Assembly (NCBI RefSeq): GCF_964204865.1
Contig: NC_135252.1
Span: 14,818,001-14,882,000, forward strand
Length of the DNA: 64,000 bases
DNA from: Styela clava
Lineage: Eukaryota
Direction: 5' to 3'
Part shown: positions 23,144 through 55,764 of the stretch, one piece after another
Position numbering within the stretch: the stretch's first letter is position 1
Layout of the letters: each line of letters opens with the position of its first letter
Program-made: the position numbers and the translations under genes
The notes under the pieces: generated by a model
Database searches by the model: none
Told to the model about the DNA's origin: nothing
The model's input: only the letters and a program-made list of their open reading frames with translations

Positions 23144-24034
23144 TCAAAATCTAGGTAAATAGCAATGACATGCCACATCAACTTGTATCAGTTTTTCGTA
23201 GCACCCATAATTGGTACACTTGTCGAACGAAGGAATATACGATTTTCTGTAGATGACTGAAACGACAACAGGAATTGGCTTTGACACGCCATTCCACGTA
23301 TGTAGTCCAGTGTTTAGATCGATGCATCCTTTGCAAAGACAAGAAGCTTCAGTTATCACTTGCGGAAATCTAAAACAGAAAAATACACATATATTGGGAG
23401 GTAATCTTTGAACTTGAAAAAATGTACTCATTAATTTGATTCCCAATGAATTTTCTTAATTTGACCCCAGAAGTTGAAAATTCCTAAACTTATTTCGATC
23501 TGGCCTTTAACATATATGCCAACACAGATGATGTGTGATCATAGTATTTGTTCTGATTTATTGTTGATTGATCACTTTGTCCATTCTTTGAACACGTTAT
23601 ACCAACCTTGTTTCGTCGTAATGAGAACAATAATCCCACGGTGAGATACTCCTAAGATTTTCCTTCTTGACCCATTTCGGAAGATTTTCTCTGCAACTGG
23701 ATCTCGGTCTGCATCCGAGTGAACTTCCTACTTGATTATCCATTGTAATCAGTCTAGCCTGGAACACCTCAAACGGTTTAGCATAGGATGGTGCATCAGA
23801 ATATTTCTTGTAATATTTAATTCGTGGTCTCACTTTACCGTTCATCCTTATATTTGTTGGATTGTGAGCTACGCGTTGGCAAATACTTTTCAAATTTTGT
23901 GTCCTGAACATGTTACATTGCGACAGTATTGATGAATGAACTGGGACTTTACCCTTCGTGTATCTCTCAGTATAAACAATATTTCCTTGCATAAAACATG
24001 AAAACCCGAGGACTAAATGAATGAATTGATTCAT
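23144..24034 (-). CDS. IL17: IL-17-like cytokine 1; exons 23607-24034, 23144-23369 (217 aa)
   Basis: Signal-peptide-like MNQFIHLVLGFSCFMQG; RSISPWDYCSHYDETR|FPQVITEASCLCKGC...VACHC. These are IL-17 family hallmarks (RSxSPW, RxP, CxCxGC, terminal CxC). Phase-2 GT..AG intron. Confidence 0.93.
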
Positions 24035-24379
24035 TATATTTACGTTATTCTGAAACATGAAAAAGTATTTAAGTCTGAAAATATTTTACAAAAAGTTGAT
24101 AATATGATAAAACAACAAGAATAATACTCCTCCCAAAAATAAAAATCGAATAGGCCTTCATGAAAAAGGGATCACTAGGGATAACTTACAACAACTATTT
24201 GAGAACATATATATTCACAAATTGCACATTTATCAATCAGTAATCTGCGATTAAAAACGTATCGAAAAGTCACAATATCTGAAGCTGTAGTAATAAATAT
24301 ACTCTCAACAAAACTTTTAGTTTATGGAACAATTTTCGTCACCTATTGCTACAAACTCTCTGCATCATCTTCGCTTGGA

Positions 24380-24388
24380 TTTTATATA
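24380..24388 (-). promoter_or_regulatory. Putative TATA box of IL17-like 1, with a short noncoding first exon (donor near 24342, acceptor at 24050)
   Basis: TATATAAAA on the minus strand ~40 nt upstream of an AG|GTGACG donor; TTTCAG acceptor 15 nt before the ATG. Confidence 0.4.
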
Positions 24389-25464
24389 CGGATCAAGGAG
24401 TGCAAACAAAGTCGATCAAAAGATGGGTGGTTCGGCAAATGAGACCGCAAAATTTCGTCGATAACCTTGTAGTATAAGACTTGTTTTAATACAAACTAGG
24501 AAACTCTTCTCGGTGAACAGCACTGAATTTTATTGACAGTTCGACAAACTGACAATAATCGAATAAAAGCTAATAACTAGCATTAATTTTTTTTACCACA
24601 AAATGTTATTCAAGACAAATCCAGTTGATTTAGTCTACCTTTAATCTCCGTCCAGTATGGTAAAACAATGAAGATTTGTTCTTATAGCAATAAAACTCGT
24701 GGGTGTATTATAACTTCTATCTATAATTTTAATGTTAACTAAGTATAGGACTGATAGCCTAATTACATATTTCCAGAATTTATATAATTATTATTTAATC
24801 TGCATATTAACTAATGAACGGATAAATTAGCGCTACCGCAACAAAGAACTTCAAAATAAAGTACGTAATAAGGAACAAATTAAGATTGTGATTGCAGCAA
24901 CAGAAATGTTAATGACATGGCAGATTTTGAACAAAGTGGGATTCAATGATGGTTGTCTCCAAATTTAAACTTTGAATAATTTTCTCTTGTCTTCGCACGC
25001 GACGGTAATTGGTATATATATTAAGTAATTATTTTGTGAGTTTTTAGGAATAAAGCAAGGAGCTCAAATACATAATTATATGTATCAAACAAGTTTATTT
25101 TTATGTACTGATTACTTTGTAAATCTATTGAAACCCAGTACAAACACATGCAGATACTCACATATATATATTAAACAACTTTCCATGAGAAGATAATAAG
25201 AAATTTGCAATAAATAGGAGTAAATCAAGTTAAAGATACTGTACTAAAATACCAGTGTTTTTATTCACCACAAACTAATCATTTAAATGTTCTGAGTGAA
25301 TGAACGCGACTTTTGAGGAAAATGCAGCCAGTCCGAAGCTGCTTTATCTCTCCATGCACCAACGAGTAAAACAATGCTTTCGCACAAAATCTCCAACAAA
25401 ATATCAATGTTGGAATTCCGCGCTGGATAAACATGGGCATAATGTCAACTTAATTTGTAATACT

Positions 25465-25875
25465 TATTGGACACGAAGTGGACATAACGATCGTTCCAAC
25501 ATTATGTTGGTCTTGTTGTTGTTGTTGTTGTTCTTTGACACTTTTTGGACATCTAGTGGAAAATATAAAAAAAACGCTTTTCTCTTTCATTACTGGACCG
25601 ATTGCTTCGAAATTTTTACAGGTTAAAGATGAAGTTTTTCTCCAGAAAGCTATTACTTTTATTTAGTTCAAATATTTCTGTTAGCTCTGTGAGATTTTTT
25701 TTGTTTGCTATGACGTCATTAAACGTTCTGCGGACATCGGACGCCATTTTGTGTTCTACTGTACTGCTTCGCTTGGTGTGAATATATTTGTAGACTGTGA
25801 TCTGACGGTACGGTTAACCGTACTGTACTGCGAACAGACGTGTCCATATATTTGGGCGTAGCTCTCTTGTCCTAA
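25465..25875 (+). mobile_element. DINE-1/Helentron-associated-like short interspersed repeat (copy 1)
   Basis: Subterminal inverted motif GGACACG...CGTGTCC, an internal (TTG)n microsatellite and a 3' end CTCTCTTGT. The core (CCGATTGCTTCGAAATTTT...AGAAAGCTATTACTTTTATTTA...ATGACGTCAT...CGTGTCCATATATTTG) is shared with ~43413-43645. Confidence 0.5.
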
Positions 25876-27118: not shown

Positions 27119-28148
27119 ATGTACGCCCCAGATTATCTTCTCATTATATCCCTCTGTTGGTCAAGTTCGTTTGGAAAATTGTTACTACCAAAATTTAATG
27201 AGCGCATGTGTGAACAGTTCAAGACCGAAAAACTCAGAAATGCTTGTCAGCGAACTTACGGGAGTACCCATCATGCTCAGTTACAAAGTCATGCATACAT
27301 GAAATCAATGAAGGATCTATTTAAAGAGTATGAGGTTGGAAAATTCATGCTATCTGATCTTTCTACAAAACTTACGTCACACCGTCACCAACTCAGTATA
27401 CAACGAAATGATGCAGACAACGGGGTAGGCGTTTCTCTGAGGTGTCGAACAAATACTCCGTGTCCCATACCTCCAAACATTCCCCAAAATAAAGAAAACC
27501 TACGTAGCAGTGCTCCCTGGGACTACTGTTTACACTTTAAAGCTACACGGTAAGTGACTTAAAATTATTTCAGACTAGATATTCTGAATTCGAATTTTCC
27601 ATATCTACAGACATAATCATTTTAAGTTTTTAAGTCTAGTTTAAATCAAATGAAACCTACTACTTTGACTCGGATTTTCACATAGAATAAGAAATTGTTT
27701 TGTTAATCATGAGCTGCTGGCCTCATCTACTAACGCCTTGTCCGGAGCGTAATAGGTAAGGTAGGCAATACCTGAACATGAAAATTCCCCTCTTTTCTAA
27801 TTCAAAAGTGGCCCCAGAAGATAATTAAGATAAGCTAGTCACCAAAATTTGATTTATTTGCATCCAGCTGCCACGTCATTCCATATCTTTCAGATTTTAT
27901 TCTCTTTTTTAAGATTTCCGCAGTGGCTCAATGAAGCAGCATGTCTGTGTAAAGGATGCATTGATTTCAATACCGGACAACATGACAGAAACGTTGTATC
28001 TAAACCTGTTACAGTCATGATAACTGTTATCATGCGTTCACGTGCCATAAGCTCGTTTGCGGAGTGTACAAATCTTACTTGCTGGGAAAAGCAAATTAGT
28101 GTAGATGTTGGATGCCATTGTCATATACCAACATGGCCGGAACACTAA
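27119..28148 (+). CDS. IL17: IL-17-like cytokine 2; exons 27119-27549, 27914-28148 (221 aa)
   Basis: Signal peptide MYAPDYLLIISLCWSSSFG; KENLRSSAPWDYCLHFKATR|FPQWLNEAACLCKGC...VGCHC; phase-2 intron. Confidence 0.93.
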
Positions 28149-28461
28149 ATAAATGGAACCTGACATGGCAAAATTTATTTTGAACTCTGCTGTCTCATCT
28201 ATTTGATATTCTTGGTAATCGTCATGGTATTTCAAATGTATATTAATAAACACTAATTGAAAATTTGTTGTACAAGTGCTTTTTTATTAGATGTCGAGGC
28301 CTGACATGTGCATCATTATTATCATTACAATCGCACGGCATAAACAAATTAACGGTACTTGCTCTGATTCGTTTAAAAAGAAAAAATTGTATGAGAACCG
28401 TACATATCACTTTATCTATAAAACATTTCATTCGTAGAATGAGGAAGTATAACGTCTGAAT

Positions 28462-35074: not shown

Positions 35075-36538
35075 ATGATTCAATTAAAATACGTCGGCAT
35101 CTTATTGGTAACAATATTAGTTCTCGCAAGATCAGAAGGCGATAGAATTCGAAGATCCTATGCACCGAATTGGAACATGTGGCGCGGAATTATCAACCAA
35201 CCTTACATGTACCCATTGAACTACCAGTATGCCTACCCAATAATACAACGTGTGCACCCTACAATTTCTACGAAAAGGGTAACAACGGAGCAGATCACGA
35301 GTCAGCCAACGACACCCACCATAGCCAATACCATAAGCACTACTACAACAATAGAACCTACTACAACAGCAGAACCTACCACAACGAATACAACGACAAC
35401 TGTTACAAATGACTCCCAGAATGAATTTGAACGCAGTTTTACTTTAACGCCAACTGCCAACAACAGTAATATTTTGCAAAAGTGTAAAAACGTTCGATTC
35501 AAGTCTCTCAGAGATTCTTGCATAAGAGTAGCACAAAATCCAATTCTTAAAGGTATGGACGACGTAAAGGGATATATAGGAGAAGAAGAAAACAATCAAC
35601 CGACTCTGCTTATAACGAGAGGATTCTCATTTCTCAAGCCAACGCTTGGGACACAAACAATATGCAATGAACCAGAAACCTGCCCCGATTATACAGTGGA
35701 CGACAGACCAACTCGGAAAAATCTATTAAGTTTATCGCCGTGGGTCATGTGTCGCGAATATGACCCGAATAGGTAAGAATGGTGGAGTCTGAACTTTTTG
35801 TTGTAGTATTTATTTTATTAGCGTTAAAACTATTAAAATACTACTTATTGGTGGATGAATATCATTAATATGATATGAACTGGTAGCGGTTTTTAAATCA
35901 TGTATCAGTCAAATTATAACAGTAACATAATATAAAAATAGCTAGTCGCCGTCAATTGATTCGTGAAATATGTAAGTAATAATGAAATACTGTGGTCAAA
36001 TTTATTGAATTAATTTGTTTGACGTAAAATGTGCACAGAAATCTTTTTGGCCAAACGTGACTTAACGATGAAGCCACAGGGTGCCATGTACATAGTTACC
36101 TATAAATATTCTACGCGTGCTCAGTAGTTCCTTGTTTTCCTGGGGGTTCGTTATTTGGTTTCCGTAAAGTGCGTGGATTTCATAAGCTGGACTTGATCTC
36201 TTATTACGTACATTGAATGAATAGTTTTCGCTGTGGGGATATTGTAGAATATACTTATCGAAACAATGTAATTATAATGAAATTGTGATTTTTGTTATAG
36301 ATTCCCGCAATGGATTAACGTGGCAAAATGTCTTTGTGGAGGTTGCATTAACTACCGGACTGGACAAGAAGAAGTCGGTGACGTGGTGTCCCAAGAATTG
36401 AGAGTGGACATTAATGTTCTCAAAAAAGACATTTTGACCCGAACATTTGGTCAATGCACACGTAAAACTTGCCGAGAGGAGGTACAAAGTGTAGCGATAG
36501 GATGTCATTGCGCATTAGCTGATTTACGTGTAAAGTGA
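35075..36538 (+). CDS. IL17: IL-17-like cytokine 3 with mucin-like Thr-rich N-terminal extension; exons 35075-35772, 36301-36538 (311 aa)
   Basis: Signal peptide MIQLKYVGILLVTILVLARS, then RIRR and a T/P-rich tract; LLSLSPWVMCREYDPNR|FPQWINVAKCLCGGC...IGCHC. Confidence 0.93.
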
Positions 36539-37475: not shown

Positions 37476-38931
37476 ATGAAATGTATTCTAATATTAAATC
37501 TGATGCTCTATTGGCTAATCACCATTGTTACGGGAAAATGTATTTCTACACCGGAGGGAACGAAATGCACGCCGGATACAACAATATACAATCCACTGAA
37601 TGGACCGCCCGGTGGTCTTTTTGACAAAAGAGAGCAGCAACCAATGAAGGCAACTCCTCACCATGAACAGCTATATAAGCAGTGCCTTGATATTCGGAAC
37701 CGGGATATGCGTAGTGCCTGTATAAGAATATCTAAGAATCCCATTCTAAAAAATATGGGAAACGGCACAAAAGGTGTTATAGACGACAGAGAATTGACTT
37801 TTCCATTTATTATCGGTCGAGGATTACACTTCCAATTTATTTCGGAACACGTGGTTCAAAACGTTTGTGATCAAAAAATGAATTGCCCAGATGGAGAAGA
37901 GTTGAAGAGAACTGATGATAATATGTCTAGTTTGTCTCCGTGGAAATATTGTATGCAGTACGATTCTTTAAGGTATGTACGCGTTTCATTATAACAACAA
38001 TTTTCTGGACTGAACCGTGTAATACCGGACATGTGGTATTTGTCGTCGAATGAATTGAAAATGATACGATACAATTGTACATCATAGGAATGGCGGGTTT
38101 ACTGCATTAGATCAGTAAAAAATAATAAAAAAAAACAGCACTCCACATCATGTTATACTCTAATAGCCACACCCTTAATTGATATGGCGTTGGGTTACCC
38201 GAAGTATGAATTATACCTTGAATATTCTAAAGTTTAGTTCAAAAATTCACATCGAAAAAAAAGGTTAAATAAAGAGTAAATATTTTATTTTACCGACTTC
38301 AATTTGATGAGGTAGATAAATACATATGCAAAGTTTGAAGCGATGTGCGTTTAATGTTGTTTAATTGGCTGCGTTAGGAACGCCCACATATTAATTATTT
38401 ATAACAAATATGCTATCTGCTCCTCATTGTCTATTTTTCGGTAAAATACGGAATCCGCGAAAACTTTGATTTTCTTATTATAACCTAGTACAGAAATAAA
38501 TCCCCCGACACTCTTAAATTAGTAATAAGTAAGTAACTGAAAGTAATAATACGCGGATCTTTTTGACTGCTGATATTTATCTCTGGTAATACCTTGTACA
38601 TATATTATGAATACACGGTATTCATCACACGGTATCGTGTGTGAAGTATTTCTTACATTCATAAAATAATTTTACTATCTTTTGCTATTTCAGGTATCCC
38701 CAGTGGATAAATGTCGCTCAGTGCTTATGTAGCGGATGCTTACATCCATTCACTGGAGCTGAAATTCATGGCAACGTTCTATCCAAGGAAATTCACGTTG
38801 AGATAAATGTTCTTCGAAAATTCTCGTTAAAGCATCCATTCAGCAAGTGTAATCGAAAAATCTGCGAAGAAACGACTCAAAAAATACCAATCGGATGTCA
38901 TTGCCAAATTGCCAATGTTCAGAATGTATAA
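37476..38931 (+). CDS. IL17: IL-17-like cytokine 4; exons 37476-37972, 38694-38931 (244 aa)
   Basis: Signal peptide MKCILILNLMLYWLITIVTG; MSSLSPWKYCMQYDSLR|YPQWINVAQCLCSGCLHPFTG...FSKCNRKICEETTQKIPIGCHCQIANVQNV*. Exon 2 is not in the ORF track and was translated manually. Confidence 0.93.
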
Positions 38932-41595: not shown

Positions 41596-42842
41596 ATGAC
41601 ATTCGCGAGTTTGTGGTTGGTAGTTATACTTCTAATTAATGTGATTAGTGTCGGGGCTGCCCAAGAAAAGAAAGGATCCACCAGCAAACTACGAACGATT
41701 CCAAAACGAATGCATTTCCAAGTCAGATCTCAATGTAAACTATTCAAAACTTGGAAAATGAAACAGCTTTGTAATCAAGTTGCATCTGATCCCAATATCG
41801 TGAAAATGGGCCGTAAAGTACGAGCATTTGTTAAAAATAACGATGAGAAAAGGTTCAGCAAAAGGATGCGTAAATTATCATCAAACGCTAGAGCTCTTAC
41901 TATTCCCACTCCTCCAGTAGATGGATTTACTATGCCTTCTATTTCTCGGACGTTATCATCAAATACTGGATTTCAATGTACGAAATCCTGTCCAAGTTAT
42001 AGTTCACTTTTGTCGGGAAAAACTCCAATTCAAAGAAGCTTTTCACCTTGGGAGTCATGCGCCCACTACGATCCTCTAAGGTAAGTTTCCTTTTAGAGAA
42101 TGATTTTGAACACAAAATTCTACGTTGAGGGAAAGAATTGATATTGCCACTTACAACATAATAGTATTAGATCCTGTTTAAAATAATTCACTACATTTGC
42201 TCAATTACTTTTATAGAGTAACTCACCATTTACAATTGTACTGAGTAATTTGTACCCAAAAAACAAACCCATGCCATTTCGAACACATTCTAGAGAGTCA
42301 AAAATTTGGGGAGAGCGTCTTAGATTCCTAAAACTTTTGGATCATACACAAATAGAAGTTCAAGATTACAAGTGTTAAATAAATTTTCTTCATTTTCATG
42401 AAGGAAATTAACATATTTATGACTTCTGTTTTTAGGTCACCCTGGAATATAAATGATTTTACATGATGAATAAACTATACATGATTTTTATGATTGAAAG
42501 GAATATTTATCGATAAACCCGTAAACAAAACCTATATCGGTTGTTCCGCAGTATCGGTGTATCTGACAAATAGATTTCTATCTACCTCATTTCTTAATTT
42601 TACTCTGCAGATTTCCTCAATGGCTGAAGCTTGGGTTTTGCTCTTGTAAAGGATGCATAAATCCAGAAACTAAAAATGAAGATATGTCATTCGTGTCGGA
42701 ACCAATCACCGTAAACATCACCGTGTTGAAACGAAAGCCAGGCGTTTCATTTAGTGAATGTAAGAATCCGAATGTGGGATGTGAAAAAGCATTACTAGAA
42801 GTTACTCTAGGTTGCACATGTGTATTACCAAAAGGAACATAA
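41596..42842 (+). CDS. IL17: IL-17-like cytokine 5 (basic N-terminal region); exons 41596-42080, 42611-42842 (238 aa)
   Basis: Signal peptide MTFASLWLVVILLINVISVGAA; QRSFSPWESCAHYDPLR|FPQWLKLGFCSCKGCINPET...FSECKNPNVGCEKALLEVTLGCTCVLPKGT*. Exon 2 was translated manually. Confidence 0.93.
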
Positions 42843-43329
42843 AGACATTTAATTCTTTAATGAACAATGCATTAATCACGTGGAATATGTTATCAACAAG
42901 TGTCCATTATGCTCCTAATTTTTAGTCTAACCTGTAAGTCTCGCTTTCTAAAATATAATAAACTAAATTGGCTTGCAAAAAATATGTTATTCATTGAAAT
43001 AAATAAAAGTACCGAAGTGGCAATGTGAATTTTGCTATTTAAAGAAAAAATAACGATATATTTGTAGCAAAAATAAATCTGTCAATAATGCAGTGGCTGG
43101 AAATCTTGGCTATTCTGTAACAGAAGTTGCCGTGAACTTTGAGATCATGGGGAATAGATAGGCTTTATTATTTGTCAGGCAGTAGCTGCTTCACATGTTG
43201 AAGCATGATTTAGGAAAGGCTAACAACTCGAACTTTCTAGAATATCTAAAGTATATAGAATATCTATTACGATTTAAAAATAAAACGCATTCAACAGCCT
43301 ACTGTATCCAAAACTTCTAGTTAGACACG

Positions 43330-43645
43330 GAGTGTAAATATGGACCGTTTTGTTTAATATTATTATTTTGTTGTTTTAGGTCAAATTCTTTTTCGTGTTG
43401 TTTTTATGAAAATAATCGTTACGAGGCCAATTGCTTTGAAATTTTCAGTGGCTAAAGATTGTGTTTTTGTTAGAAAGCTATTACTTTTATTTATACCAAA
43501 AGTTTTTTTTAGTCTCCATGACATTCGTTTTGTGTGTGCGATGACGTCATCACTGTGGCGGTTCCCGTCAGGTGAAGTCGTGAAAACCGCATACTACTTC
43601 GTTGTGGCTTTCGTGTCCATATATTTGAGCATCGTTTACTTGTTT
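43330..43645 (+). mobile_element. DINE-1/Helentron-associated-like short interspersed repeat (copy 2)
   Basis: Shares CCAATTGCTTTGAAATTTT...AGAAAGCTATTACTTTTATTTA...ATGACGTCAT...CGTGTCCATATATTTG...CTTGT with ~25585-25875. The left boundary is approximate. Confidence 0.5.
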
Positions 43646-44542
43646 AACAGAATATCGAAAACGCAACAGTTACTGTTTTTCCTTTCTCCTACAATTTGTC
43701 AGTGAGATGATGATTGAATAAACATTACTATTTCACTTTTCAATTGGTTCAGAAAATTTACGATGACCGAACTTATTTGCAATCGGGAATTCCTTTCGAG
43801 AATAAGTATCGATGCGTCAATGGATATTTCATCGTCTTCTTCCGTTTGATCTAAGCGCCAAGTGATTCATTGCGAACACGAGCGCTCGAATATAGAAACA
43901 TTGATAGAAAATGAGAAATATAACACGCTAAATATAGAAATCGAAAAAAATAAATTTTCACAATGCCTTTGTGACGCAACTCGGCTGGTACATCATGTTA
44001 ACTCTCAAGACAATATTAACCATCAACTCATTTGTACACTGGCGGAGCTCACCATATATAAACGCGATTTACGTAAGATTTTTAACAAGAATTATAAATC
44101 CGTACTGGAAGAGCAAGAAATGACATTTTAAGGGACATCAAACAACTTATTGTACTAGATTGCCGAAGATAAAAACCACAGGTATCCACCAAAGAAGCGT
44201 ATAGCAGACAAAACCATACTGTTCACAGCCCGAGGGAACATGTGCTTTAATTCAAGTTTTTGTCTATATCCAGCTGCACTATAAATACCGCTAAGTTGTC
44301 GCAAACATTCGACGATGCGAAAGAACAACATATAATTAAAAATATGTTACCAAAATACTGGAGGAGGAAAAGTAATGTATAGCAAATCGGTTTTACCAGT
44401 TTACCAGATTGACAAGAAAAGCAGCAGAATTTGCTACAGGATATTATTAGTTTAACAAGAGTATGGGTTACATGGCGTTGCTAATCCGAGCAAAAATCGA
44501 GCTGGTTGCAGTGACACATTGAGAACAGGACTAACTCTACAG

Positions 44543-45218
44543 CAGGGGTCTCCAACTCAAAACATGTCGCGGGCCACTTTTTGAAATTGATTGGCCACGC
44601 GGGCCGCAAATCAAGAAATTAAGTACAAAAATGAGTATCAAAATGTATTGTGTTGAAATTACACTTGAATCTTACAGCAAACGAGACATGAAACATATTC
44701 ATGTACTTGTGTTGGATATTTGGTTCCGATGTTTGGCCTTTATTTTAGTTTGCTAGTCTTAATTAAGACAGCATGCAAATGCTCGTCCGTTAGTCGTGTG
44801 CGGAGGGCTAACTTTCATAGTTAAAATAAAAATTATCGCAAATGTAAGAACTGCCAAACATCGCAGCAGGTATGCAACGTGAATGTGCAATTAGCTTCGC
44901 AAACTATTCTTCGGGCATAATGAACTGACCGAAACTCGTTTATTTCGTCACAAGGAACATGCGAAATGAAATTATTGTATTCATTATTGAAATGTAACAA
45001 TAGAATAAAACATGAACGTGGTAAAGTGGAATAACAATGGAAAATTCTTGCTCCACTTATTACAGTTTGTCGGACCGGATTCTTGATGATAAATGACACG
45101 ATAAAAGTTTACATCGTACTATTTTAGTTTATGTGGGAAAATCCCAATCATGACGCGGGCCGCAAAAAATGCCTGGCGAACCGCATGCGGCCCGCGGGCC
45201 GCGTGTTGGAGACCCCCG
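44543..45218 (-). mobile_element. 676-bp hAT/Charlie-like deletion derivative with a transposase C-terminal remnant
   Basis: TIRs CAGGGGTCTCCAAC and GTTGGAGACCCCCG; perfect 8-bp TSD CTCTACAG (44535-44542, 45219-45226); GCGGGCC(G/A)C subterminal repeats. A minus-strand remnant reads FGSSYICDNF...RTRLTDEHLHAVL, resembling the hAT C-terminal dimerisation region. Confidence 0.9.
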
Positions 45219-46373
45219 CTCTACAGTCTCAATATCGAGTCAAGCACAATCCAGGTTACGTTATTTTCGAAAGTCGAAATGTGTATGATGGCATTCATAT
45301 TCCATTCCGTTTAATAATTGTATATAAACTCTATATATGATAAAATACTTGAAAATTTCATGTTATTGGGTTTATATTTTCAATCTGGATTTAAGTTAAA
45401 ACAATAGATGAAAAAGACAAAAAGACGAGGACCAATGTTATCATTCGGGTCGGGATTTAGAGTGAAGAATGTTGCATAAAAATGCATTTCAAGTGAGATG
45501 AATTTTGTTGAGAATCGAGAAATATGCGATGTCACACGTCCTCAAGGATTATCAGCGCCATGATTTGAATCCAACATTAGATGCAATTTGTAAGTTTCTA
45601 AAAATAAAAATTATTTGTATCTTTGAAAATACAGATACTGAAAATAGTTACGTAGAAGGGAATATGGCCTGAACTATTTACCTATTCAATGATATATATA
45701 TATATTATATATATATAATATAATATTATTAATAGAGGACAAAATTCAGTCGTCAAAAATTTCATAAAACAGAAGATTTCGGTTAAAAACTTACTACGTA
45801 TACAACAAAAAATACACAAACGTTGTCAGGGACAGAAAGATATAAAATAAAAATAAGCAGTTTTGTAAACTCAGAGGCAGTATTAATTAGAATTATTCAT
45901 GGCTTTTGCGATTGTTGACTGAAGCATAATGTACATTAATCACAGGAGAAATGCACGATGAATCATATAATCACCAAGTGCTTTTCAAATTTGGAACGTT
46001 CGGAGCAATATTAGATCAAATATTACGAATAAAGCCTGCAGCGGAATATATGTCGTTATACTGTCATCATTCTGTTATTGGAACAACAAAATAAATGATG
46101 TATAGTGCAAATTTCTATGTGATTCATGAACTAGAACCAATAACCTGTTCTGCATTGCGTAACGATATGAAATTTACAGTTTCAAACCACTTTTTCGTGA
46201 GTTACAAAAACATAAGTTTAATCATAAGAACGCATTTCATCATATCTGCTAACAATTAACGAGTAATTCGTCACAACGCCTCGCAAGGTGAATAATAGCC
46301 AAACATGACTGTGCTAAAATATTTTAGCAATGTGGTGTCATGACGACAATGTTGATTTTTGAAAAAAAACATT

Positions 46374-46380
46374 TATAAAA
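46374..46380 (+). promoter_or_regulatory. Putative TATA box of IL17-like 6
   Basis: TATAAAAGG ~185 nt upstream of the ATG at 46560; the AT-rich background limits significance. Confidence 0.3.
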
Positions 46381-46559
46381 GGCAGTGACAAAAAATCTCT
46401 TACAAACTGGCTAAGTTTACTTTACAACAGGGCAAAAACCCGAGTTATACAATTTAAAATTGATTTATTTTTCACGAAAAGGTTATATTTATATTATATA
46501 GAATTGGATATTTTACGTTCCGTACTTGCAACTAGCAGTCAATTAACGGAATCAAAAGC

Positions 46560-47811
46560 ATGAGCAATTTGATATCACTGTTATGTATCTTGCTATTTTC
46601 AATTAAAATTGGAACATCACAACCAACACATGAATCGAACCACCAACACAACGACACAACACATGAATCGAATCAAGTCGATACAGAGAACTTCGTGCTT
46701 ACAGCTACAACAGCAAAGCCAGAAGAGGAGACAACGTTATCTATTTTGGAACAATTTCGCAGAGCTCTTCCAACTGTTCCAACTGCCAAGCCTGCTAAGA
46801 TTCCTCGAATTCCGGCCCACAAAGGAATAATTAAAAAGTGCAAATTGCTCCCAACGTACAGACTTCGAGAATCCTGCAAATCAATAGCGGAGAATGGGCT
46901 TATATACAGTATGGAGAAAAATGTTTTAGCATTTGTAAACAGAACCGAAGAAAAAGAATTTTACAAGAAAGAATCGGTCACTGGGGAAAGATCATTATCA
47001 TTTGGCATTGCTCTTCCGGGAGAGCAGAACTGTGATGCGACATGTCCTTCTGGAAAAGAATGGTCGACTGCCACTGAAAAGCATGAACGCAGTTTTTCAC
47101 CATGGGGATATTGTGATAACTACGACCCAGATAGGTAAATACAATTTCATTTACTCAATACATCCAAGTTAATACTATTACTATCGGAAATTGATCAATA
47201 TCCAGGTCAAGAGAGTTGAAATTTATTTGACGGCGATTGGTTTGCGGTTTGTTTTTCAATATAGCGCCGCGTTCTAATACTAATTCCAACTCTTAAGCTG
47301 CAGACACGGTCAAAAATTTAGACCTCTACGCGAAAGAATTTACCACGGAATAGCATTTGCAACGACAGCGTTTAAATTGTCTTAATTTTTTGAAACGCAA
47401 AATCTAATCTAAAATTATTCGTGCCTGTTTAGAAGTTCTGTTCATTGTTTATCAAAACTGTAAACAAAATTATAAAATAGCCATCAAAACAATTGTACCC
47501 TATTACGCAAAACATGCAAAATAATAAAAAAATTTGATTCGTGACATATATACCATTTAACTGAATAAATGCATATTTTCAGACTTCCACAGTGGATATC
47601 TTATGCTAAATGTAAATGCAAAGGATGTATGGATCCCAACACGCTTGAAGAAAATCTCAGCTACAGTTCAATAGAACTAAAGACGGCTATTCCGGTTTTA
47701 AGAAAAGAGCAAGAAGTGATGGATTTTCAAGACTGTACGAACAAAAAATGCAAAGAAAGTGTCGTTGAAATCGTTATCGGTTGTTATTGCTTTTTGCCAT
47801 TTATATCCTAA
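46560..47811 (+). CDS. IL17: IL-17-like cytokine 6; exons 46560-47134, 47583-47811 (267 aa)
   Basis: Signal peptide MSNLISLLCILLFSIKIGTS; THESN repeated twice and a T/P-rich linker; ERSFSPWGYCDNYDPDR|LPQWISYAKCKCKGC...IGCYC. Confidence 0.93.
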
Positions 47812-48948
47812 CTCAACTTTGTCTGAATTGTTGATAGCTGAGGCTTGTTACTGTAAACACATTCAATTTTTGGTGAAATGAGAAAAAAAATTATTTATTG
47901 TCGCCTGCATGAAAAACTTGCATCTGCATTTTCTCCGCCCTATCGAGAGTTTCATAAACACTACGATAAACTAAGTAAACGCTCTCGTACAGCATTCCCA
48001 CTCCAAATTTGTTTGTAAGATTTGACATTTGATTCGTGTTCATTCAAAAAAAAATAGCCGTAATTTTAGGGCTGAAAATACCAAATCAAGCTTACGCAGA
48101 ATAGCATGTTGAGTGTAAACAGCCAAATGCAGATTTACTTAACGCAAACTTGATTTCTCAGTCAGTTCCATATTTTAGTCCATAGTATCAGAAATACGAT
48201 AAATCTGTTATACATAAGATATAGATGCTAATGGACATTTTCACAAATTCGTGTATTCAACGGACTGCAAAGTTAATATTTGTTTGTATATTATGTTGTT
48301 TGCTTCTGGTATATCATGACGAATACTATCCAACAAACTTGCATCTTTGTACCAGTGTTGATCATATTTAGATATTCAAATTATATATACGATAATAAAA
48401 AAACAGAATGCACGATAAGACCTTTCTCAACGAAATGTAGGATGCAGAATACAACAATCTCATTACACCTTTTCATTCTACAAATGCATCACAGTCATCG
48501 TTCAGGTGAATTTTGTCGAGTCTCGGGCCAACCGGTATCCGATGTTTTGGTATCCGCATATTGGTCACAGGGTCATATCCAAAACCCATTGTGTGACAGT
48601 AATTGCTTTCAACTTTTCTACCGGTAATCGAGCCTTGCTTCGAATAATAAAAAAAGTGAATTTGGTTGAATACTTCAATTGAATGGGTATCTAGTCTTTA
48701 GCAAGTGGAACTGAATCCTAATATTACACAAATCTTATGTAAATTATGCCACAAACATTAAAGCGTGATACTAGTCTTCGGACACCTATCCATTTTATAG
48801 ACTTGAATGCATTTATTATGAGCTTGTCATAGAACAGTTTCGAATTGACTGCTCTAAACTTTGTATAGGAGTTTATTGAAAATACAAGACCGTGAAGTAG
48901 GCTACTGTTATTCATTAGGCTTTACTGAGATTGTCAAGTCATCGTGGT

Positions 48949-50860
48949 CTATTCGAATGAAAACCTTCTACAATGACACCCGATAGGAATCTCAATGACT
49001 TTCAGCTCGCAATCTCCTGTCTTAGAATCACAACTCGAGAACGTTATCGATGCAGATTTTCTCATTATCACTGATTCTTCCGTTGTCAATAGTTCAGATG
49101 CTAAGCTAAAATCTTCGTTACCGGTAGCAATATTAATGCATCCTTGGCAGAGACATCGGGCAAACAAAATCTTTTCCGGGAATCTAATAAAAATAAATGG
49201 AAACTTTTAAGATTTCGTGTTTTTAAAAAAATAATATGCTGTCTAGTTATGATACTTGTGATAATGTAATAATAATAATAAAATTTGTGTGATAAATATA
49301 CCGCTTACAAGCAAAAATGCTAAAATTGAGGTAGTTTATGAAGTATAGCATAGAAACTGAAAGGTTATTACGTATAAACGATATCGACTTACATGTTCCC
49401 AAAATTGAGAACAATTTATTCCAAATGTTAACAAACAAGATAATAACCTGAGTGGGTCATAGTCGACGTAGTAATCCCAAGGAGAAATGCTCATTTGATG
49501 TTTCTCTTTTCCCAATAAACTCAGATCACACGTTGGTCTTCCTAAAATTTGAATTTTTGAATGCTTTTATTGATAATCATAATAAAAATATTCGAAAACA
49601 ATTTGAAGATAAAAAAAGACAAAGCTAATCTCAAATGATATATCAATATTTGAACCCAATATTTCGAATAGACAAATGTTGTTCTTTGGACGTATTATCT
49701 TTAAATTATTTTTACTGAAACGTTTATTTTAACTAAGACTGTTTAGGGTGGATTATCACATGTTGAAGCGTTTTGGCATATGAAAAAAAACGATGAAAAC
49801 ATAAATTTTCAATTTTAAACTCTTTCATCTTTATATTAAAATACTTTAGTAAATATCACTCTAAAACTTTGACCAGAAAACCAGTTTGAAAGCATTTATT
49901 TTTGGTCATTTTTTCAAATAAAACTTCTCTAAATTTCAACATTTGCCTTTTTGTCTGAAAAACCTCGTATTCACATATAATAGGTTTGAGAATGAGGATG
50001 GAAAGATATATGTCAGTTCACCAGACTTTAAATTGGCAGTCATAAACTTTGCAACATATCACCAAATTCAATACAATATGGATTTAAATTCGAAATACTA
50101 CTCATGTAGCATCGTTACTCCGATGTTATTTACCTGCAGGTTTGCCCAATTTCACGGGTATTCCGGGAAAAATCGCTTCTAGATTCTCTATTCTAGCAGG
50201 AATCTTCTCTATCATCGTGATTGTAGTCGGCGGTGGTGTTTCAGAAACTACCAACATTCCTCGCGAACCGTCGTCCCTACCTGGTTGAATCGAATTATAA
50301 TGCCAAGAATTTTCTTCTGGCCTTTCAATGCGTAGATCGTTTCGCCCTTTTCCAGTGATCCTATCATACAAAGGATTTGTTTGTTCATTCTCATCACTAA
50401 TATTCGTATTCTCTGACAAAACTTCAGATTCGCGGACGCGAAGATTTTGTATTGCGGGATATTCGATTTCGTATTCGATTTCCACTATGTCATTTCCATT
50501 ATAGTCACACGGTCTTTCCACATTCTTTATAGCGGTATCCTCACTTAACACTCCAGTTATGGGGTTGTGAATATTTTGTATTCCGGGTTTTTCAATTTCA
50601 TCTTCGCTTTCCACTGGCAATACCGGGTCATGATCATATGACTCAATTAACTCACTCTTGAAATGCGGACTTAATGAAATATATCGACAGGCCTGACGCA
50701 GTTTTCTGTCCACGAACATTTTGCACTTTTTCCTTATTTCCGAACTCCCTAATTTCTTATAACCTTTGACAGAAGAAAATCGATTTACAGAACACCAACA
50801 GACTGAAAATAGCGTCAGTAATAACACCAAACGAACAAAATAAAAATATTTCTTCACCAT
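48949..50860 (-). CDS. IL17: IL-17-like cytokine 7 with a long acidic repeat insertion; exons 50134-50860, 49448-49541, 48949-49183 (351 aa)
   Basis: Signal peptide MVKKYFYFVRLVLLLTLFSVCWC. An extra 94-nt exon encodes (G)RPTCDLSLLGKEKHQMSISPWDYYVDYDPL(R). The last exon reads FPEKILFARCLCQGC...IGCHC. All splice phases match. Confidence 0.9.
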
Positions 50861-53088
50861 TTCTGTTTGAGGTTATATCCAACTATTTCACAATAGACAC
50901 GAGATTACCCATTAGAATCAGTTCTGCGTTTCGAAATCGTAAAATCTTGAAGATTATGTTGTTTACGGCATTTGCGTCACGCTGGCCACCCTTTCCCCCG
51001 ATCACAGCAAAGCGTGACGGCGAAGCTTCCATGCGTAAATCACTACTTATAAAATGCTTAGTCCTGGTGGCATCATCAAATCCATCGCCTGTTCCAAAAT
51101 AAATTTTCTCAATGTCTCGCGTAGTTTCATTAGTATGATATCGAGTTGAACAAGTATAAACCGCTAGATAAAAATATATTTGGACTGAAATTAACTATAA
51201 TTTCAACTGAAGGGCGAGAAAGATAAACATTGAGTAAAATTGTATGCAATCAGATCTTCAAATCATTGACAAAATTAGTAATCACTGAAAGCTTATTGGC
51301 GACACCGAGTGACTAAACTTCGTTGAAGAATGCAAAGGTCAACTATTACGAAATCTTTAAATCCATTTTCTGAACGCTTCGCAAAGAAGATCGGTACAAT
51401 CACAAGACTTACATATATCAGATTATTTTTAGACAAAACAAAATCGACGGAAAGTGCACGAACCGCGAATTTGGAATTTGAAAGCCAAATCTACTTTACG
51501 TAAAGATAGTATATAGAAGTAACACGTTTACGCCGTTAACTTGGTAGTCTGCGTAAAAATAAACAAACGAATTATAAGGCCATTAATGAACGAAACATTA
51601 ACGTAAAGTAATTGCAAGATATTTACTGCTGTCACGACTTTCTATCCTTAATAGTATGAGTAATAAAAAAGAGTGATTTTCGAAACGTTAGATATTTTAT
51701 TCTTGCTCACAAGATTTATAATTAATCCACGTTTAATTTTAATATGAAGGATTTTTATATGAAATTATCTCAAATCTAAGAAAAACAATTAGTTTTCATG
51801 ATATTCAACTTATAAATAATTACTTGTCCAGACATATCATATCACTTCGACTTTTCTAGGCAAACGAGTTGGTATTGAATATGCTGGATAATTTTGTTCA
51901 GACCAATGTGAAAGTCAAGTAAAAAAAAATCATCGAGTTTGTTTGTCAAACTGGTGATCATTGTGGATTAAATTTGAAGCACAGATACTTTGAAAATGTT
52001 TCAAGGCGTGGTCGTGAAATTCTAACCAAAATCGTATAGTAATATTACATATGATGTTGTTGCAGTTCAGTTTCATTGCTTCTCCTCGTCCTTCATGGTA
52101 TCAATACAGTATTGCATTTTCTCTGTGAAATACCATTATTATATTTCATTTTCGCAATTTATTTTTTTATCGAAATGTCGGACTCGGTCAACTGTTTTTC
52201 TGAAAACATCTATTTGTTTCTATGTTCGTCATAAGCCTATCAGACACTGATGCATCACACATGTCTCCCAACTATCCTTCTAGCATAAATACTCGTCGAG
52301 TAATGCAACATTCAGTATTCGGATTGGACAAGGAATTGTTTTGGTAAAGCAGTATTACGAACAAATTTTATTATTATTTGTACCACCGCGCAGTATCTAA
52401 ACAATATATATATCTCATCTATGCCTCCAGTACTTCATGTCCAATGCTCTCATGCCACAAAACACGACTTCGACGTAAATCTAAGTAAGTCAATAAATTT
52501 AAAATGCAAACAACGACTTATATTTTTTCATTGTTATTCCTAATCTGCTTTTTTGTACCTAAATTCGCAAAAAAACACGAACGAAACAGTTGAAGCACGC
52601 TGTGGTATTTTATTTAATTACTGAAATCAACGAACTTGGAAAAATAATAATTTACTGAACTATATAACCAAAGTCAAAAAATATCATAAATATGAAAAAG
52701 CAAAAGTAAAAATAAATTATTTTGGACATAACATAAACACAAATGCAGGGCATTCATAAATGCGGAATATTGTGCGCATAATCAGAAAATAAATAATAAA
52801 TATCGGACGTACAGTGGGCTTATGAAAAGTTCATTCGCAAAAATGGTTTGTGCTTTAGAAGGAGTAACTTGTGGCCAGTCGTGGAAATTGGCCAATCGCT
52901 CTTCAGTCTTACAATGGCAATTTTGCCTCTGGGCAAGAACAAGATACGTGATATAGTTACGAGGATACCAATGCCCACCAAAGAAATTTACGACATTACT
53001 TAATTAGATTCTGTTCCTCGCTTTCACTCGTCTTCCACTGAATGAAACAACGATTCTTCGAATATGCTCATTCCAGTTGCAAGGTCGT

Positions 53089-55764
53089 TCAGGGACTAAG
53101 CTCAACTGGAATTGCACAATGACAACCAACCGCAATATCCTCGTCGGAAGCGTAGCACGTACTATCGGTGCATTGACGAAATGATGAATGAGTAGAATTC
53201 ATGCGAAGAAATCTGACTTTAACTTTAATTTCTTTTGAAACAAAAGCTTTATTTTCTTTTCCTGAGCGTTGGTCTATACACCCCTTGCACATACATCTTG
53301 CGACAGGAATCCACTGGGGATACCTAAATGGTTGGAACAAAAGTAGGGATTAGAATTAAACAATGAAATAGAACGAAGATGGTGTTTTAGGATACGATAT
53401 ACACTATTAATTGCGTAATATCATCTCACACATTTTCCAAATGGCATAAAATACACATTAATTACCGCATCTCACGTTTTACAAAGATTGCGTTAGTGAT
53501 GCAACTTTTACTCTTTAGAAATTGACCTTCTGACCGAAAAACGATATAAATGACGTCACAATGCCCTTATGTATAAATATATTATGACGTGTAGCATTTA
53601 TATAGAAATATATTCATTGTATATATAAACCAATTATGCAATATGCAAATGGGACACTCTAACACACCAAAATTGCAAATTTATATTGAATTGACTATTC
53701 ATTACTTGAACTTGATGAGTGATTTATAATTTTATTCATGTAAGTAATGAGAAAAGGCCAAATCAATTTTTGAAATAATCGACGGATCTGATTCCATAAT
53801 TTACGTGCAGAAGCTAATGATCAACGCAAAACGAAACCTGATATTTGCTAGTTCAGAAGTCTTATTACATTGAGCCAAGATGTTTGATTAAACGACCCTT
53901 GTATACGAAACTAATATGTTAGGCAAGTTGAATCCATGATTTCGGTGTATTCTCATGCCAAATTTAAATGAAATGATGTAGATTTTACGTTAAAATTTCG
54001 GGATATTTAGTCATGGTAATGCTATAGAATATATGTATTGTTAATTCGAAATGGGAAAGAGTATTAATGAACAAAACGAAGGAAATACAATATCGTTTAA
54101 TGAATTCGTATATAAATGTAATTGTGAAAGGTTAAAAATGCATAATCCGGATGTTGTACATTTGTATATTTTAGTTCGTAAGTGCGCTATTGATTGACCG
54201 TATTAGTTGAACATGTTTCATCCGTGGCCTACGCTTTGTTTAATTTTTGTGTACTCATTCGATAAACTTAGAAAAATCATCATTTTATGATGCTTCGGAA
54301 TTCGACACGTTTGTTTGCATAAAATGTCAACAATTACTTTGATATTTTAATTTTTGTTCCGATATGCAAATTAAAAATTTGAAATTAGAAATTATATTTC
54401 GTGCATATAATAAAAATGAATTAAATTCAAAAGAATATGAAAGCGAGGAATATTTTCGATTATATTATTGGAATTATTTTAGTCTAAACATATCACGTTT
54501 TTCTTTATTAATTTCGATATACGTTGTTTTTTTCTGTGGATTTTAATATTTACGAAATACTTATGGGCGTTTCTGGAGACAGCGAGGCCGTAATACACCA
54601 TGCCAACTTCCAAAAGTTTACTTCTTGGAACAAATCTGACGTAAAGTTATAATTTTTCGGGGCAATACATTACGTACATTCATCCAATTATCTAGTTTAA
54701 GGCTTCCGATATCGCTTACAATGAGCAGATTCAACGACAAAATTGTTGATAAAATGGCTTCGAAGACAGACATTTTATTGTTAAAGTATCGTAAATAAAA
54801 TCAGGGATTTTATCAAAATGCTGATTGTTAAAAAAACGTTGTTTAGCTGCGATAGCGTTTTACGGCATATGACGTGATTTTTTTTATTCAAAAAGTATTT
54901 TACCGTTTTCCAATCTCAACTTTGGAGGTGTGGCCCCATATTACCGACACCCATTTTTGTAGGACCATGACTATGCATTGTAAAATTGTTTGATGATCGG
55001 TAATGCTAATCTTAATAGAGATTTAAACTGCCTGTGACATAACCATTGACATTTGTCGTAAATATGCTGCGTACGAGGTACGTGCATATCTTAAAGAGTA
55101 ATCACATGTCCCTCCTTGCATTGAAATACAAACTAGTGTCTATAAATAAACGTACTTTCCTAAAAACAGAGTTAGGTACCATGGTAAAGATTCAATACAA
55201 CATTGATATGGTATCACATTGTTGTAAAAATAAAACTGACTTCTAAAAATAATATTAAACGTGTATTTACCTTTGTACGTCAAAATCTGGCATCATTTTC
55301 CAAGGGGATAAACTTCTATCGTGAGGTTGTACGTACGGGGTTTGATGTGAATAATCCGGACATTTTAACCCTTGTTGTCCTTCCAGAGGTATATCGCTCT
55401 TTGTTATCTGAGTCGTCCACGGCAGTTGTTTGAGATGTCCACGAACTTTTTCTTTCATTGACACAATAATAGGATTTTCAGCAATTCTCTCACACAATTG
55501 TCTTAATCTTGGCGTTGGAAAGTATTCACACTGTCTCAATAAACCTTCGTGATTTTTGACATCTGGTCGTGATCTCAACAAACTTTCCCTGGTAGTATAT
55601 TCTGGCATCGTAATAGTTGATTGAGTGTTCTGTATTTGAAAGTGTGATTCTGGGTAGAGAATACTTTTGGCAGAAACTGAATTTTTCAGTATGTGCACTA
55701 ACATCCACAATATACCCAATCTCAATACTCTAATCACGTTCATGACACTTCGCGTTCTAGACAT
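53089..55764 (-). CDS. IL17: IL-17-like cytokine 8; exons 55271-55764, 53089-53323 (242 aa; alternative ATG at 55743)
   Basis: Hydrophobic signal VLRLGILWMLVHILKNSVSA; DRSLSPWKMMPDFDVQR|YPQWIPVARCMCKGC...VGCHC; 1.95-kb phase-2 intron. Confidence 0.93.

What the first reader, a model, noticed from the sequence alone, without database searches (positions are those of the whole stretch)
23144..55764. Tandem cluster of eight intact, highly diverged IL-17-like cytokine genes
Seen in the sequence: eight genes in ~33 kb, all with a signal peptide, SPW (or APW) motif, CxCxGC and terminal CxC, an identical phase-2 intron inside the Arg codon of 'R|F/Y/L-P', and open frames with no stops. Established: these motifs define the IL-17 cystine-knot family, which is expanded in several invertebrate lineages. 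Inference: this is a lineage-specific, diversified cytokine locus kept intact by selection. The ORF track splits every gene and misses three exons, so automated annotation could under-call it.
Basis: partly seen in the sequence, partly recalled or inferred. Interest (0 to 1): 0.85.

Follow-up and report, generated by a model that had tools for sequence, protein, structure and literature searches.

The report
Eight-gene IL-17 cytokine cluster, sea squirt
This stretch of the sea squirt Styela clava genome holds eight real, intact and old copies of genes for the immune signalling protein IL-17; all eight are already in the public annotation, so this is a sound but fairly ordinary family expansion.

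Summary
Window 23144-55764 contains exactly eight IL-17 genes: g1 on the minus strand, g2-g6 on plus, g7-g8 on minus. Every last exon hits Pfam IL17 (PF06083) at 46-53 bits against a cut-off of 24. All eight share a phase-2 intron inside an Arg codon. Spliced RNA contigs from three studies confirm the introns of g6 and g7. They also show one more intron in g7, which therefore has three exons and is intact at 351 aa.

An AlphaFold model of the g5 product matches human IL-17A/F (VIA-align Z 9.2, rmsd 2.6 Å over 92 residues). A homodimer is predicted at 0.63, against 0.00 for the best control.

The organism is Styela clava. All eight genes already have RefSeq models. Three are named IL-17B/C/D-like and five "uncharacterized". 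The g1 and g4 models are cut short at the N-terminus.

The genome has at least 32 IL-17-domain exons. The scan has already reported another IL-17 cluster in this same genome.

The eight genes, plus one on another chromosome, form a subfamily. It is marked by an extra cysteine pair in the β3-β4 loop and by a conserved N-terminal helical region with two invariant cysteines, which matches no Pfam family or PDB fold. Synonymous sites are saturated between all paralogs, so the copies are old and kept by selection.

Verdict: new members of a known kind, of modest interest.

The parts
23144..24058 (-). g1, IL-17 gene. Exon 1 runs 24058 (or the inner Met at 24034) to 23607, intron 23606-23370 (237 nt), exon 2 23369-23144 including the stop.
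   Evidence: Last exon hits PF06083 at 48.1 bits. Splice sites AG|GT..AG|A. RefSeq 'interleukin-17B-like', 203 aa, 100% identical and starting at an inner Met.
27119..28148 (+). g2, IL-17 gene with APW in place of SPW. Exon 1 27119-27549, intron 27550-27913 (364 nt), exon 2 27914-28148.
   Evidence: PF06083 at 53.2 bits. Donor CG|GT, so the split Arg codon is CGA. Equals RefSeq XP_039268281.1 'interleukin-17C-like', 221 aa.
35075..36538 (+). g3, IL-17 gene with a long Thr/Pro-rich N-terminal insert. Exon 1 35075-35772, intron 35773-36300 (528 nt), exon 2 36301-36538. The ORF is open from 34991, but the signal peptide begins at the Met at 35075.
   Evidence: PF06083 at 50.4 bits. Equals RefSeq LOC120343373, 311 aa.
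37476..38931 (+). g4, IL-17 gene. Exon 1 37476-37972, intron 37973-38693 (721 nt), exon 2 38694-38931.
   Evidence: PF06083 at 46.4 bits. RefSeq XP_039268648.1 'interleukin-17D-like' has only 110 aa and starts at 37878. The open frame continues 134 codons upstream to a Met with a hydrophobic leader and the N-terminal Cys motif.
41596..42842 (+). g5, IL-17 gene. Exon 1 41596-42080, intron 42081-42610 (530 nt), exon 2 42611-42842.
   Evidence: PF06083 at 52 bits. Equals RefSeq LOC120343317, 238 aa (P0001). AF2 model pLDDT 87.3. IL-17A/F fold match. Homodimer score 0.63 against 0.00 for the best control.
46560..47811 (+). g6, IL-17 gene. Exon 1 46560-47134, intron 47135-47582 (448 nt), exon 2 47583-47811.
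   Evidence: PF06083 at 49.5 bits. The junction is seen in spliced contigs of 4 of 4 runs from 3 studies. Equals RefSeq LOC120343102, 267 aa.
48949..50860 (-). g7, three-exon IL-17 gene with a long acidic insert. Exon 1 50860-50134, intron 50133-49542 (592 nt), exon 2 49541-49448, intron 49447-49184 (264 nt), exon 3 49183-48949.
   Evidence: PF06083 at 51.4 bits. The 264-nt intron is seen in 4 of 4 runs and the 592-nt intron in 2 runs. The frame is open for 351 codons. Equals RefSeq LOC120343101, 351 aa, 97-99% identical.
53089..55764 (-). g8, IL-17 gene. Exon 1 55764 (or the inner Met at 55743) to 55271, intron 55270-53324 (1947 nt), exon 2 53323-53089.
   Evidence: PF06083 at 50.7 bits. Equals RefSeq LOC120342569, 242 aa.
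47812..48948 (.). Convergent 3' untranslated regions of g6 and g7.
   Evidence: RNA contigs cover the whole interval between the two stop codons. One contig runs from g6 into g7 (table 8). This shows coverage, not a single transcript.

Best explanation
The window carries eight functional genes of the interleukin-17 family in the ascidian Styela clava. With one more gene on another chromosome (C10), they form an old, diversified subfamily.

Each gene encodes these parts in order:
- a signal peptide;
- a variable spacer;
- a conserved helical N-terminal region braced by two invariant cysteines (C-x10-C-x-R-[IV]-x3-P);
- a Cys-containing linker;
- the IL-17 domain.

The IL-17 domain begins ...RSxSPW..D-P-x-R in the upstream exon and continues in the last exon.

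The knot is the incomplete two-disulfide type typical of tunicates and vertebrates. The four knot cysteines align with those of human IL-17A. Ser (Ala in g2) stands at the first of the two positions that are cysteines in other invertebrates and Ser at the second.

Inferred steps: the proteins are secreted, form parallel homodimers (perhaps also heterodimers) through the beta-sheets of the IL-17 domain, and signal through SEFIR-domain IL-17 receptors, which the genome also encodes. By analogy with Ciona and sea urchin IL-17s, the likely setting is mucosal or haemocyte immune responses.

Shown here: gene structures, family membership, predicted fold, splicing and expression of g6 and g7, the age of the duplicates, and purifying selection.

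Inferred only: secretion, receptor binding and an immune role.
For: - Family: Pfam IL17 at 46-53 bits (cut-off 24) on all eight last exons, covering profile positions 15-80 of 81. A profile of the eight last exons finds human IL-17A (E 1.3e-7), IL-25 and IL-17F in the PDB, and the knot cysteines and the conserved Ser align.
- Fold: AF2 model of the g5 product has pLDDT 87.3 and pTM 0.72. Foldseek gives IL-17A at E 2.3e-8, probability 1.00. VIA-align gives Z 9.2, rmsd 2.6 Å, 92 aligned residues, 35% identity.
- Dimer: homodimer ipSAE 0.63 against a best control of 0.00. The three runs agree in at least 48% of their contacts and partner pLDDT is at least 58. The interface lies on residues 138-150, 180-196 and 228-236.
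- Transcripts: spliced RNA contigs give the exact junctions of g6 and g7.
- Selection: dS is saturated or above 1.6 for all paralog pairs while dN is 0.22-0.69 in the last exon. dN/dS is about 0.13 for g5 against its C10 paralog. SNPs run 14 synonymous to 5 non-synonymous.
- Receptor side: seven SEFIR-domain exon hits in the same genome.
- Literature: tunicate and vertebrate IL-17s all lack cysteines 1/4 of the knot (PMC11087794). Ciona IL-17 genes respond to LPS (cited in PMC8353272). Sea urchin IL-17 genes lie in similar tandem arrays and act in the gut epithelium (PMC5457136).
Against: - No experiment or expression series links these genes to immune challenge.
- Transcripts were checked only for g6 and g7, because one read-laying run was allowed. 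The runs' status as RNA is a guess by the tool, although spliced contigs argue for it.
- Signal peptides were judged by hydropathy only.
- The RefSeq models for g1 and g4 lack the leader.
- g7 has an odd number of cysteines in its mature part. g7 and g8 lack the Cys after SPW that the other six have.
- The dimer pass may reflect the model's memory of solved IL-17 dimers.
- The long helical N-terminal region has no counterpart in solved IL-17 structures, so the mode of action could differ.
Confidence: 0.85

Rival explanations
1. The genes are true IL-17-fold ligands but have been recruited to a non-immune role, such as a hormone-like, developmental or neurotrophin-like signal. The conserved helical N-terminal region would act as a functional or pro-domain. 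The crustacean female sex hormone, which carries an IL-17 domain, would be a precedent.
For: - A conserved N-terminal helical region with two invariant cysteines is modelled with pLDDT about 97 inside the full-length protein. It has no Pfam family and no PDB fold (best Z 3.1).
- The ESM Atlas features of that region point weakly to Spaetzle/NGF-type clusters, at 0.77, which is below the tool's noise level.
- g6 and g7 are transcribed in runs from three studies, and no run is known to involve challenge.
- IL-17-domain hormones exist in crustaceans (PMC10604874).
Against: - No consistent dibasic processing site lies between the N-terminal region and the IL-17 domain.
- The Atlas score is within chance.
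- Large, fast-diverging tandem families are the usual pattern of immune ligands (PMC5457136, PMC8353272).
- The conditions of the sequencing runs are unknown.
Confidence: 0.12
2. Several of the eight copies are silent or decaying duplicates, and only a few are working genes.
For: - Transcripts were confirmed only for g6 and g7.
- RefSeq models of g1 and g4 are N-terminally truncated.
- g7 and g8 have lost cysteines that the others keep.
Against: - All eight frames are open over 217-351 codons although synonymous sites are saturated between copies.
- All splice sites are canonical.
- All seven last-exon cysteines and the two N-motif cysteines are invariant.
- All eight have RefSeq gene models.
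Confidence: 0.05
3. The proteins belong to another cystine-knot family (neurotrophin, Spaetzle, coagulogen, TGF-beta-like) and only resemble IL-17.
For: IL-17 and neurotrophin knots are related folds (PMC11087794). There is a weak Atlas lead to Spaetzle/NGF for the N-terminal part.
Against: - Pfam reports only IL17 above its cut-off.
- PDB sequence and fold searches return only IL-17A, IL-17F and IL-25.
- The closest named proteins are vertebrate IL-17C, lamprey IL-17B/D and amphioxus IL-17D.
Confidence: 0.01

Closest known systems
Vertebrate IL-17 family: human IL-17A/F/IL-25 structures, with IL-17C as the nearest vertebrate sequence group
   Same: - PF06083 domain and the same beta-strand fold (Z about 9, 35-38% identity over about 88 residues).
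- The same four knot cysteines, with Ser at the two lost knot positions.
- A predicted parallel homodimer.
- The RSxSPW...D-P-x-R-[YF]-P...C..GC...GCxC signature.
- IL-17C proteins also show the CLCxGC form.
   Different: - An extra Cys pair in the β3-β4 loop (SFxxC-x4-6-C), where IL-17A has one Cys.
- A 100-270-residue N-terminal extension with a conserved, disulfide-braced helical region that is absent from solved IL-17 structures.
- Nine paralogs instead of one.
- Orthology to IL-17C is only weakly supported: 90/89 on a 77-column tree.
Ciona intestinalis/robusta IL-17 genes (CiIL17-1 to -3; 6-7 counted by PMC8353272)
   Same: They are tunicate IL-17s with the incomplete, olfactores-type knot. 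They are reported to be induced by LPS (cited in PMC8353272 and PMC11087794).
   Different: Styela clava has at least 32 IL-17-domain exons genome-wide against the 3-7 reported for Ciona. No Ciona sequence was compared directly here.
Sea urchin SpIL17 tandem arrays (eight SpIL17-1 genes in 59.8 kb; PMC5457136)
   Same: A tandem array of about eight IL-17 genes in tens of kilobases, with one to three exons per gene, inside a family of about 35 genes split into subfamilies.
   Different: - The urchin genes keep the full six-Cys knot.
- The first exon of the SpIL17-1 genes encodes only two residues, and the domain is not split by the Arg-codon intron.
- Copies within the urchin array are close paralogs, whereas the Styela copies are anciently diverged (dS saturated).
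Other IL-17 clusters in the same Styela clava genome (C5:15.02-15.08 Mb, C3:2.19-2.23 Mb, C2:18.35-18.38 Mb; earlier scan notes s1-822883 and s1-813323)
   Same: The same family. In nearly all loci the same phase-2 intron splits the Arg codon, and CLCxGC and GCTC are shared.
   Different: The other subfamilies lack the two loop cysteines and score 53 bits or less against a profile of this window's last exons. The window genes and the C10 paralog score 91-126 bits.

Membership tests
Interleukin-17 family (Pfam PF06083) | A profile match above Pfam's gathering score | tested here: met
   All eight last exons score 46.4-53.2 bits against a cut-off of 24 and cover profile positions 15-80 of 81. 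The upstream exon holds the SPW part but is too short to score alone.
Interleukin-17 family (Pfam PF06083) | Four conserved knot cysteines (C-x4-C on strand 2, C-x-C on strand 4) aligned with those of IL-17A | tested here: met
   C11, C16, C68 and C70 of the last exon are invariant in all eight. They align with the cysteines of the AKC, LGC and GCTC motifs of human IL-17A.
Interleukin-17 family, olfactores (tunicate and vertebrate) 'T2' knot type | The two other knot positions are Ser, not Cys | tested here: met
   SPW in seven genes and APW in g2. Ser30 of the last exon is invariant and aligns with the Ser of NSVPI in IL-17A. The type is defined in PMC11087794.
Interleukin-17 family | IL-17 three-dimensional fold | tested here: met
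   For the g5 product only. AF2 pLDDT 87.3. Foldseek probability 1.00, E 2.3e-8 to IL-17A. VIA-align Z 9.2, rmsd 2.6 Å, 92 residues.
Interleukin-17 family | Secreted: an N-terminal signal peptide | tested here: inconclusive
   All eight have a hydrophobic stretch within the first 25 residues, with a 10-residue Kyte-Doolittle mean of 1.96-3.40. No dedicated predictor was at hand. The RefSeq models of g1 and g4 start downstream of the leader.
Interleukin-17 family | Dimeric ligand | tested here: met
   Homodimer of g5 residues 25-238: ipSAE 0.63, best of 3 controls 0.00. The mark was reached by 21 of 30 proteins solved as pairs of one chain and 0 of 23 solved as single chains. The three runs agree in at least 48% of their contacts and partner pLDDT is at least 58. 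This is a prediction only and may come from memory of solved IL-17 dimers.
Interleukin-17 family | Binds an IL-17 receptor (FN3 ectodomain plus SEFIR) and signals through CIKS/Act1 | not testable with these tools
   The genome has seven SEFIR-domain exon hits above the cut-off, so receptors or adapters exist. Binding was not tested.
Interleukin-17 family | Induced by microbial challenge or inflammation | not tested
   Only the presence of spliced g6 and g7 transcripts in three studies of unknown condition was shown.

The most novel reading that the evidence does not exclude
The eight window genes and their C10 paralog form a tunicate IL-17 subfamily, possibly co-orthologous to vertebrate IL-17C. 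Its members have gained a new, conserved N-terminal helical module braced by a disulfide, which packs on the IL-17 domain, together with an extra loop disulfide. Under this reading the module is not a cleaved leftover. It would tune receptor choice or keep the ligand latent, which would give a mode of IL-17 regulation not known in vertebrates.
Probability: 0.2. Interest if true: 0.55.

Novelty: new member of a known kind. Interest (0 to 1): 0.33.

Why it matters
[quoted passage not shown] Styela clava, an invasive fouling ascidian, has at least 32 IL-17-domain exons in several clusters. No paper in the searched library describes this expansion.

This shows that large IL-17 expansions, known from sea urchins and molluscs, also occur inside the chordates. 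It also offers a set of old, strongly diverged paralogs for asking how IL-17 ligands and receptors diversify.

The conserved N-terminal helical region is a concrete, testable structural novelty. Beyond that the finding is a correct reading of genes that are already annotated.

Tried and rejected
I could not view annotated neighbours or the source species of the unnamed 'Logan' relatives P0004, P0008, P0009, P0011, P0014, P0015, P0019 and P0027.
- Word-based protein searches found only the gene's own product and one paralog, because the paralogs share too few 5-residue words. The exhaustive HMMER search was needed.
- Exon-1 peptides have no Pfam family.
- The N-terminal helical part folded alone has pLDDT 73 and no PDB match, best Z 3.1.
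- The ESM Atlas gave only sub-noise Spaetzle/NGF leads at 0.77. I treat these as no evidence.
- dN/dS between paralogs cannot be computed for most pairs, because dS is saturated.
- A frameshift or pseudogene reading of g7 was rejected after RNA contigs showed the extra intron.
- Four ORFs of 100 aa or more, three between g2 and g3 and one downstream of the cluster, have no Pfam family.
- Paper searches for IL-17 in Styela or for an ascidian expansion found nothing relevant.
- Two 30-nt loose ends of RNA contigs upstream of g6 are not in the window.
- Searches were done exon by exon by reference, or with database proteins (P ids) that equal the spliced products. One script concatenated g7's exons internally, only to count its length and stops.
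- The N run at 7758-7897 was left untouched.

Full report
**What is there.** A six-frame motif scan finds CxCxGC exactly eight times in the 64-kb window. Each is paired on the same strand with an upstream SPW, or APW in g2. Reading the junctions shows that the upstream exon always ends ...D-P/x-x-(A/C)G|GT. The last exon always begins after ...AG| with A or G and then F/Y/L-P. The intron therefore sits after the second base of an Arg codon in all eight genes.

The genes are:

| Gene | Span | Strand |
|---|---|---|
| g1 | 23144-24058 | - |
| g2 | 27119-28148 | + |
| g3 | 35075-36538 | + |
| g4 | 37476-38931 | + |
| g5 | 41596-42842 | + |
| g6 | 46560-47811 | + |
| g7 | 48949-50860 | - |
| g8 | 53089-55764 | - |

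This is a cluster of mixed orientation, not a strict head-to-tail array.

**Family membership.** Translated by reference, every last exon hits Pfam IL17 (PF06083) at 46-53 bits against a cut-off of 24, over profile positions 15-80 of 81. The first exons hit nothing.

A profile of the eight last exons finds human IL-17A (E 1.3e-7), IL-25 and IL-17F among solved structures. The alignment places C11, C16, C68 and C70 on the four knot cysteines of IL-17A. It places the invariant Ser30 on the Ser of IL-17A's NSVPI. Together with SPW, this is the incomplete two-disulfide knot that PMC11087794 describes as the only type in tunicates and vertebrates.

**Organism and annotation.** The g5 exon-1 peptide is 100% identical to an NCBI protein of Styela clava: LOC120343317, 238 aa, which is exactly exon 1 plus exon 2. 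An exhaustive HMMER search, tblastn back to the window, and cluster look-ups show RefSeq models for all eight genes:

| Gene | RefSeq model | Length |
|---|---|---|
| g1 | interleukin-17B-like (starts at an inner Met) | 203 aa |
| g2 | interleukin-17C-like | 221 aa |
| g3 | LOC120343373 | 311 aa |
| g4 | interleukin-17D-like (truncated) | 110 aa |
| g5 | LOC120343317 | 238 aa |
| g6 | LOC120343102 | 267 aa |
| g7 | LOC120343101 | 351 aa |
| g8 | LOC120342569 | 242 aa |

**Transcripts.** Thirteen public runs hold parts of 41500-51000. Nine of them hold 23-38% of the sampled words.

I laid contigs of four runs from three studies on 45300-51200. They give these joints:
- g6: a GT..AG joint that skips exactly the predicted 448 nt, in 4 of 4 runs.
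- g7: a joint that skips the predicted 264 nt, in 4 of 4 runs.
- g7: a further joint that skips 592 nt (50133-49542), in 2 runs.

The last joint resolves the frame break between g7's signal-peptide ORF and its SPW piece. The three-exon model has 351 codons and no internal stop, and it equals the RefSeq model.

The tool only guesses that these runs are RNA, but intron-less contigs with canonical ends argue for it. Only one read-laying run was allowed, so g1-g5 and g8 were not checked.

**Structure.** I built an alignment of 76 relatives. The AlphaFold model of the g5 product has pLDDT 87.3 and pTM 0.72. Residues 141-238 match IL-17A and IL-17F:
- Foldseek gives E 2.3e-8, probability 1.00.
- VIA-align gives Z 9.2, rmsd 2.6 Å, 92 residues, 35% identity.

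A homodimer of residues 25-238 scores 0.63 against 0.00 for the best of three controls. The mark was reached by 21 of 30 proteins solved as pairs of one chain and 0 of 23 solved as single chains. The runs agree in at least 48% of their contacts and partner pLDDT is at least 58. The interface lies on the beta-strands of the IL-17 domain. This supports IL-17-like dimerisation, but it may be from memory of solved IL-17 dimers.

**The N-terminal region.** All eight genes, and their relatives, share a motif with two invariant cysteines, C-x10-C-x-R-[IV]-x3-P. In the full-length model it forms four helices at pLDDT about 97.
- It has no Pfam family.
- Folded alone, it has pLDDT 73 and no PDB match, best Z 3.1.
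- The Atlas leads to Spaetzle/NGF clusters, at 0.77, are below noise.
- No consistent dibasic site separates it from the IL-17 domain.

This region is the one feature not explained by known IL-17 structures.

**Genome context and history.** PF06083 hits at least 32 exons in the genome, all above the cut-off:
- eight in this window;
- five at C3:2.19-2.23 Mb;
- ten on C5;
- three at C2:18.35-18.38 Mb;
- six scattered.

A profile of the window's last exons scores the eight at 105-126 bits and one C10 gene (LOC120339463) at 91 bits. All the others score 53 bits or less. The subfamily mark is an extra Cys pair in the β3-β4 loop.

The phase-2 intron in the Arg codon is present in nearly all the other loci too. 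It is therefore a family-wide inherited feature and not special to this cluster.

I built a tree on 77 columns, which is weak. It groups the window genes, the C10 paralog, unnamed relatives, a Clavelina protein and vertebrate IL-17C proteins at 90/89, apart from the other Styela subfamilies. Three pairings are well supported: g1 with P0015 and then g2; g3 with g4; and g5 with the C10 gene.

Synonymous sites are saturated between all paralog pairs. dN is 0.22-0.69 in the last exon, and dN/dS is about 0.13 for g5 against the C10 gene. SNPs among the transcripts are 14 synonymous to 5 non-synonymous. Open frames of 217-351 codons at this age imply purifying selection.

Seven SEFIR-domain exon hits show that the receptor or adapter side is present.

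**Comparison and novelty.** IL-17 expansions in tandem arrays are well known in sea urchins, where eight SpIL17-1 genes lie in 59.8 kb (PMC5457136), and in molluscs (PMC8353272). The same survey lists 7 and 6 in its two count columns for Ciona. No paper in the searched library treats Styela IL-17.

The scan itself has already reported a ten-gene IL-17 cluster, with about 39 genes genome-wide, on another piece of this genome. It has also reported a three-gene IL-17-fold family.

I therefore file this as new members of a known kind. The finding is real, correctly read and already annotated. It has a modest extra in the conserved N-terminal module and the size of the tunicate expansion.

**Limits.**
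- No self-joined spliced protein was sent to any search tool.
- The N run at 7758-7897 was not touched.

Noticed in passing
window 45451-46058 (+): In one run, an RNA contig joins 45589 to 45946 with GT..AG ends, about 600 nt upstream of the g6 start codon. In another run, a contig runs unspliced from 45810 into g6. This may be a 5'UTR intron or an alternative start of g6, or a separate non-coding transcript.
   Followed up: no
window 45912 and 46396: In two runs, RNA contigs match up to these places and then continue for 255 nt into sequence that is not in the window. This could be a haplotype difference, splicing to a distant exon, or chimeric contigs.
   Followed up: partly
window 46767: One run carries a 9-nt in-frame insertion within g6 exon 1, in the variable spacer before the N-terminal motif. 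This shows length polymorphism in that region.
   Followed up: no
G000 C2:18349755-18376570 and C8:15868988 (L018, L023, L025, L026): This is a very divergent IL-17 subfamily with CCxCxxC in place of CLCxGC. It lacks the Arg-codon intron and sits on a long branch of 3.2 changes per column.
   Followed up: partly
G000 C5:15021399 and C5:15028962 (L028, L027): Two IL-17 genes end in a long Arg/Lys-rich C-terminal tail after the GCxC motif. The window genes have no such tail.
   Followed up: no
window 7758-7897: A run of 140 N, either an assembly gap or masked sequence, lies outside the finding.
   Followed up: no
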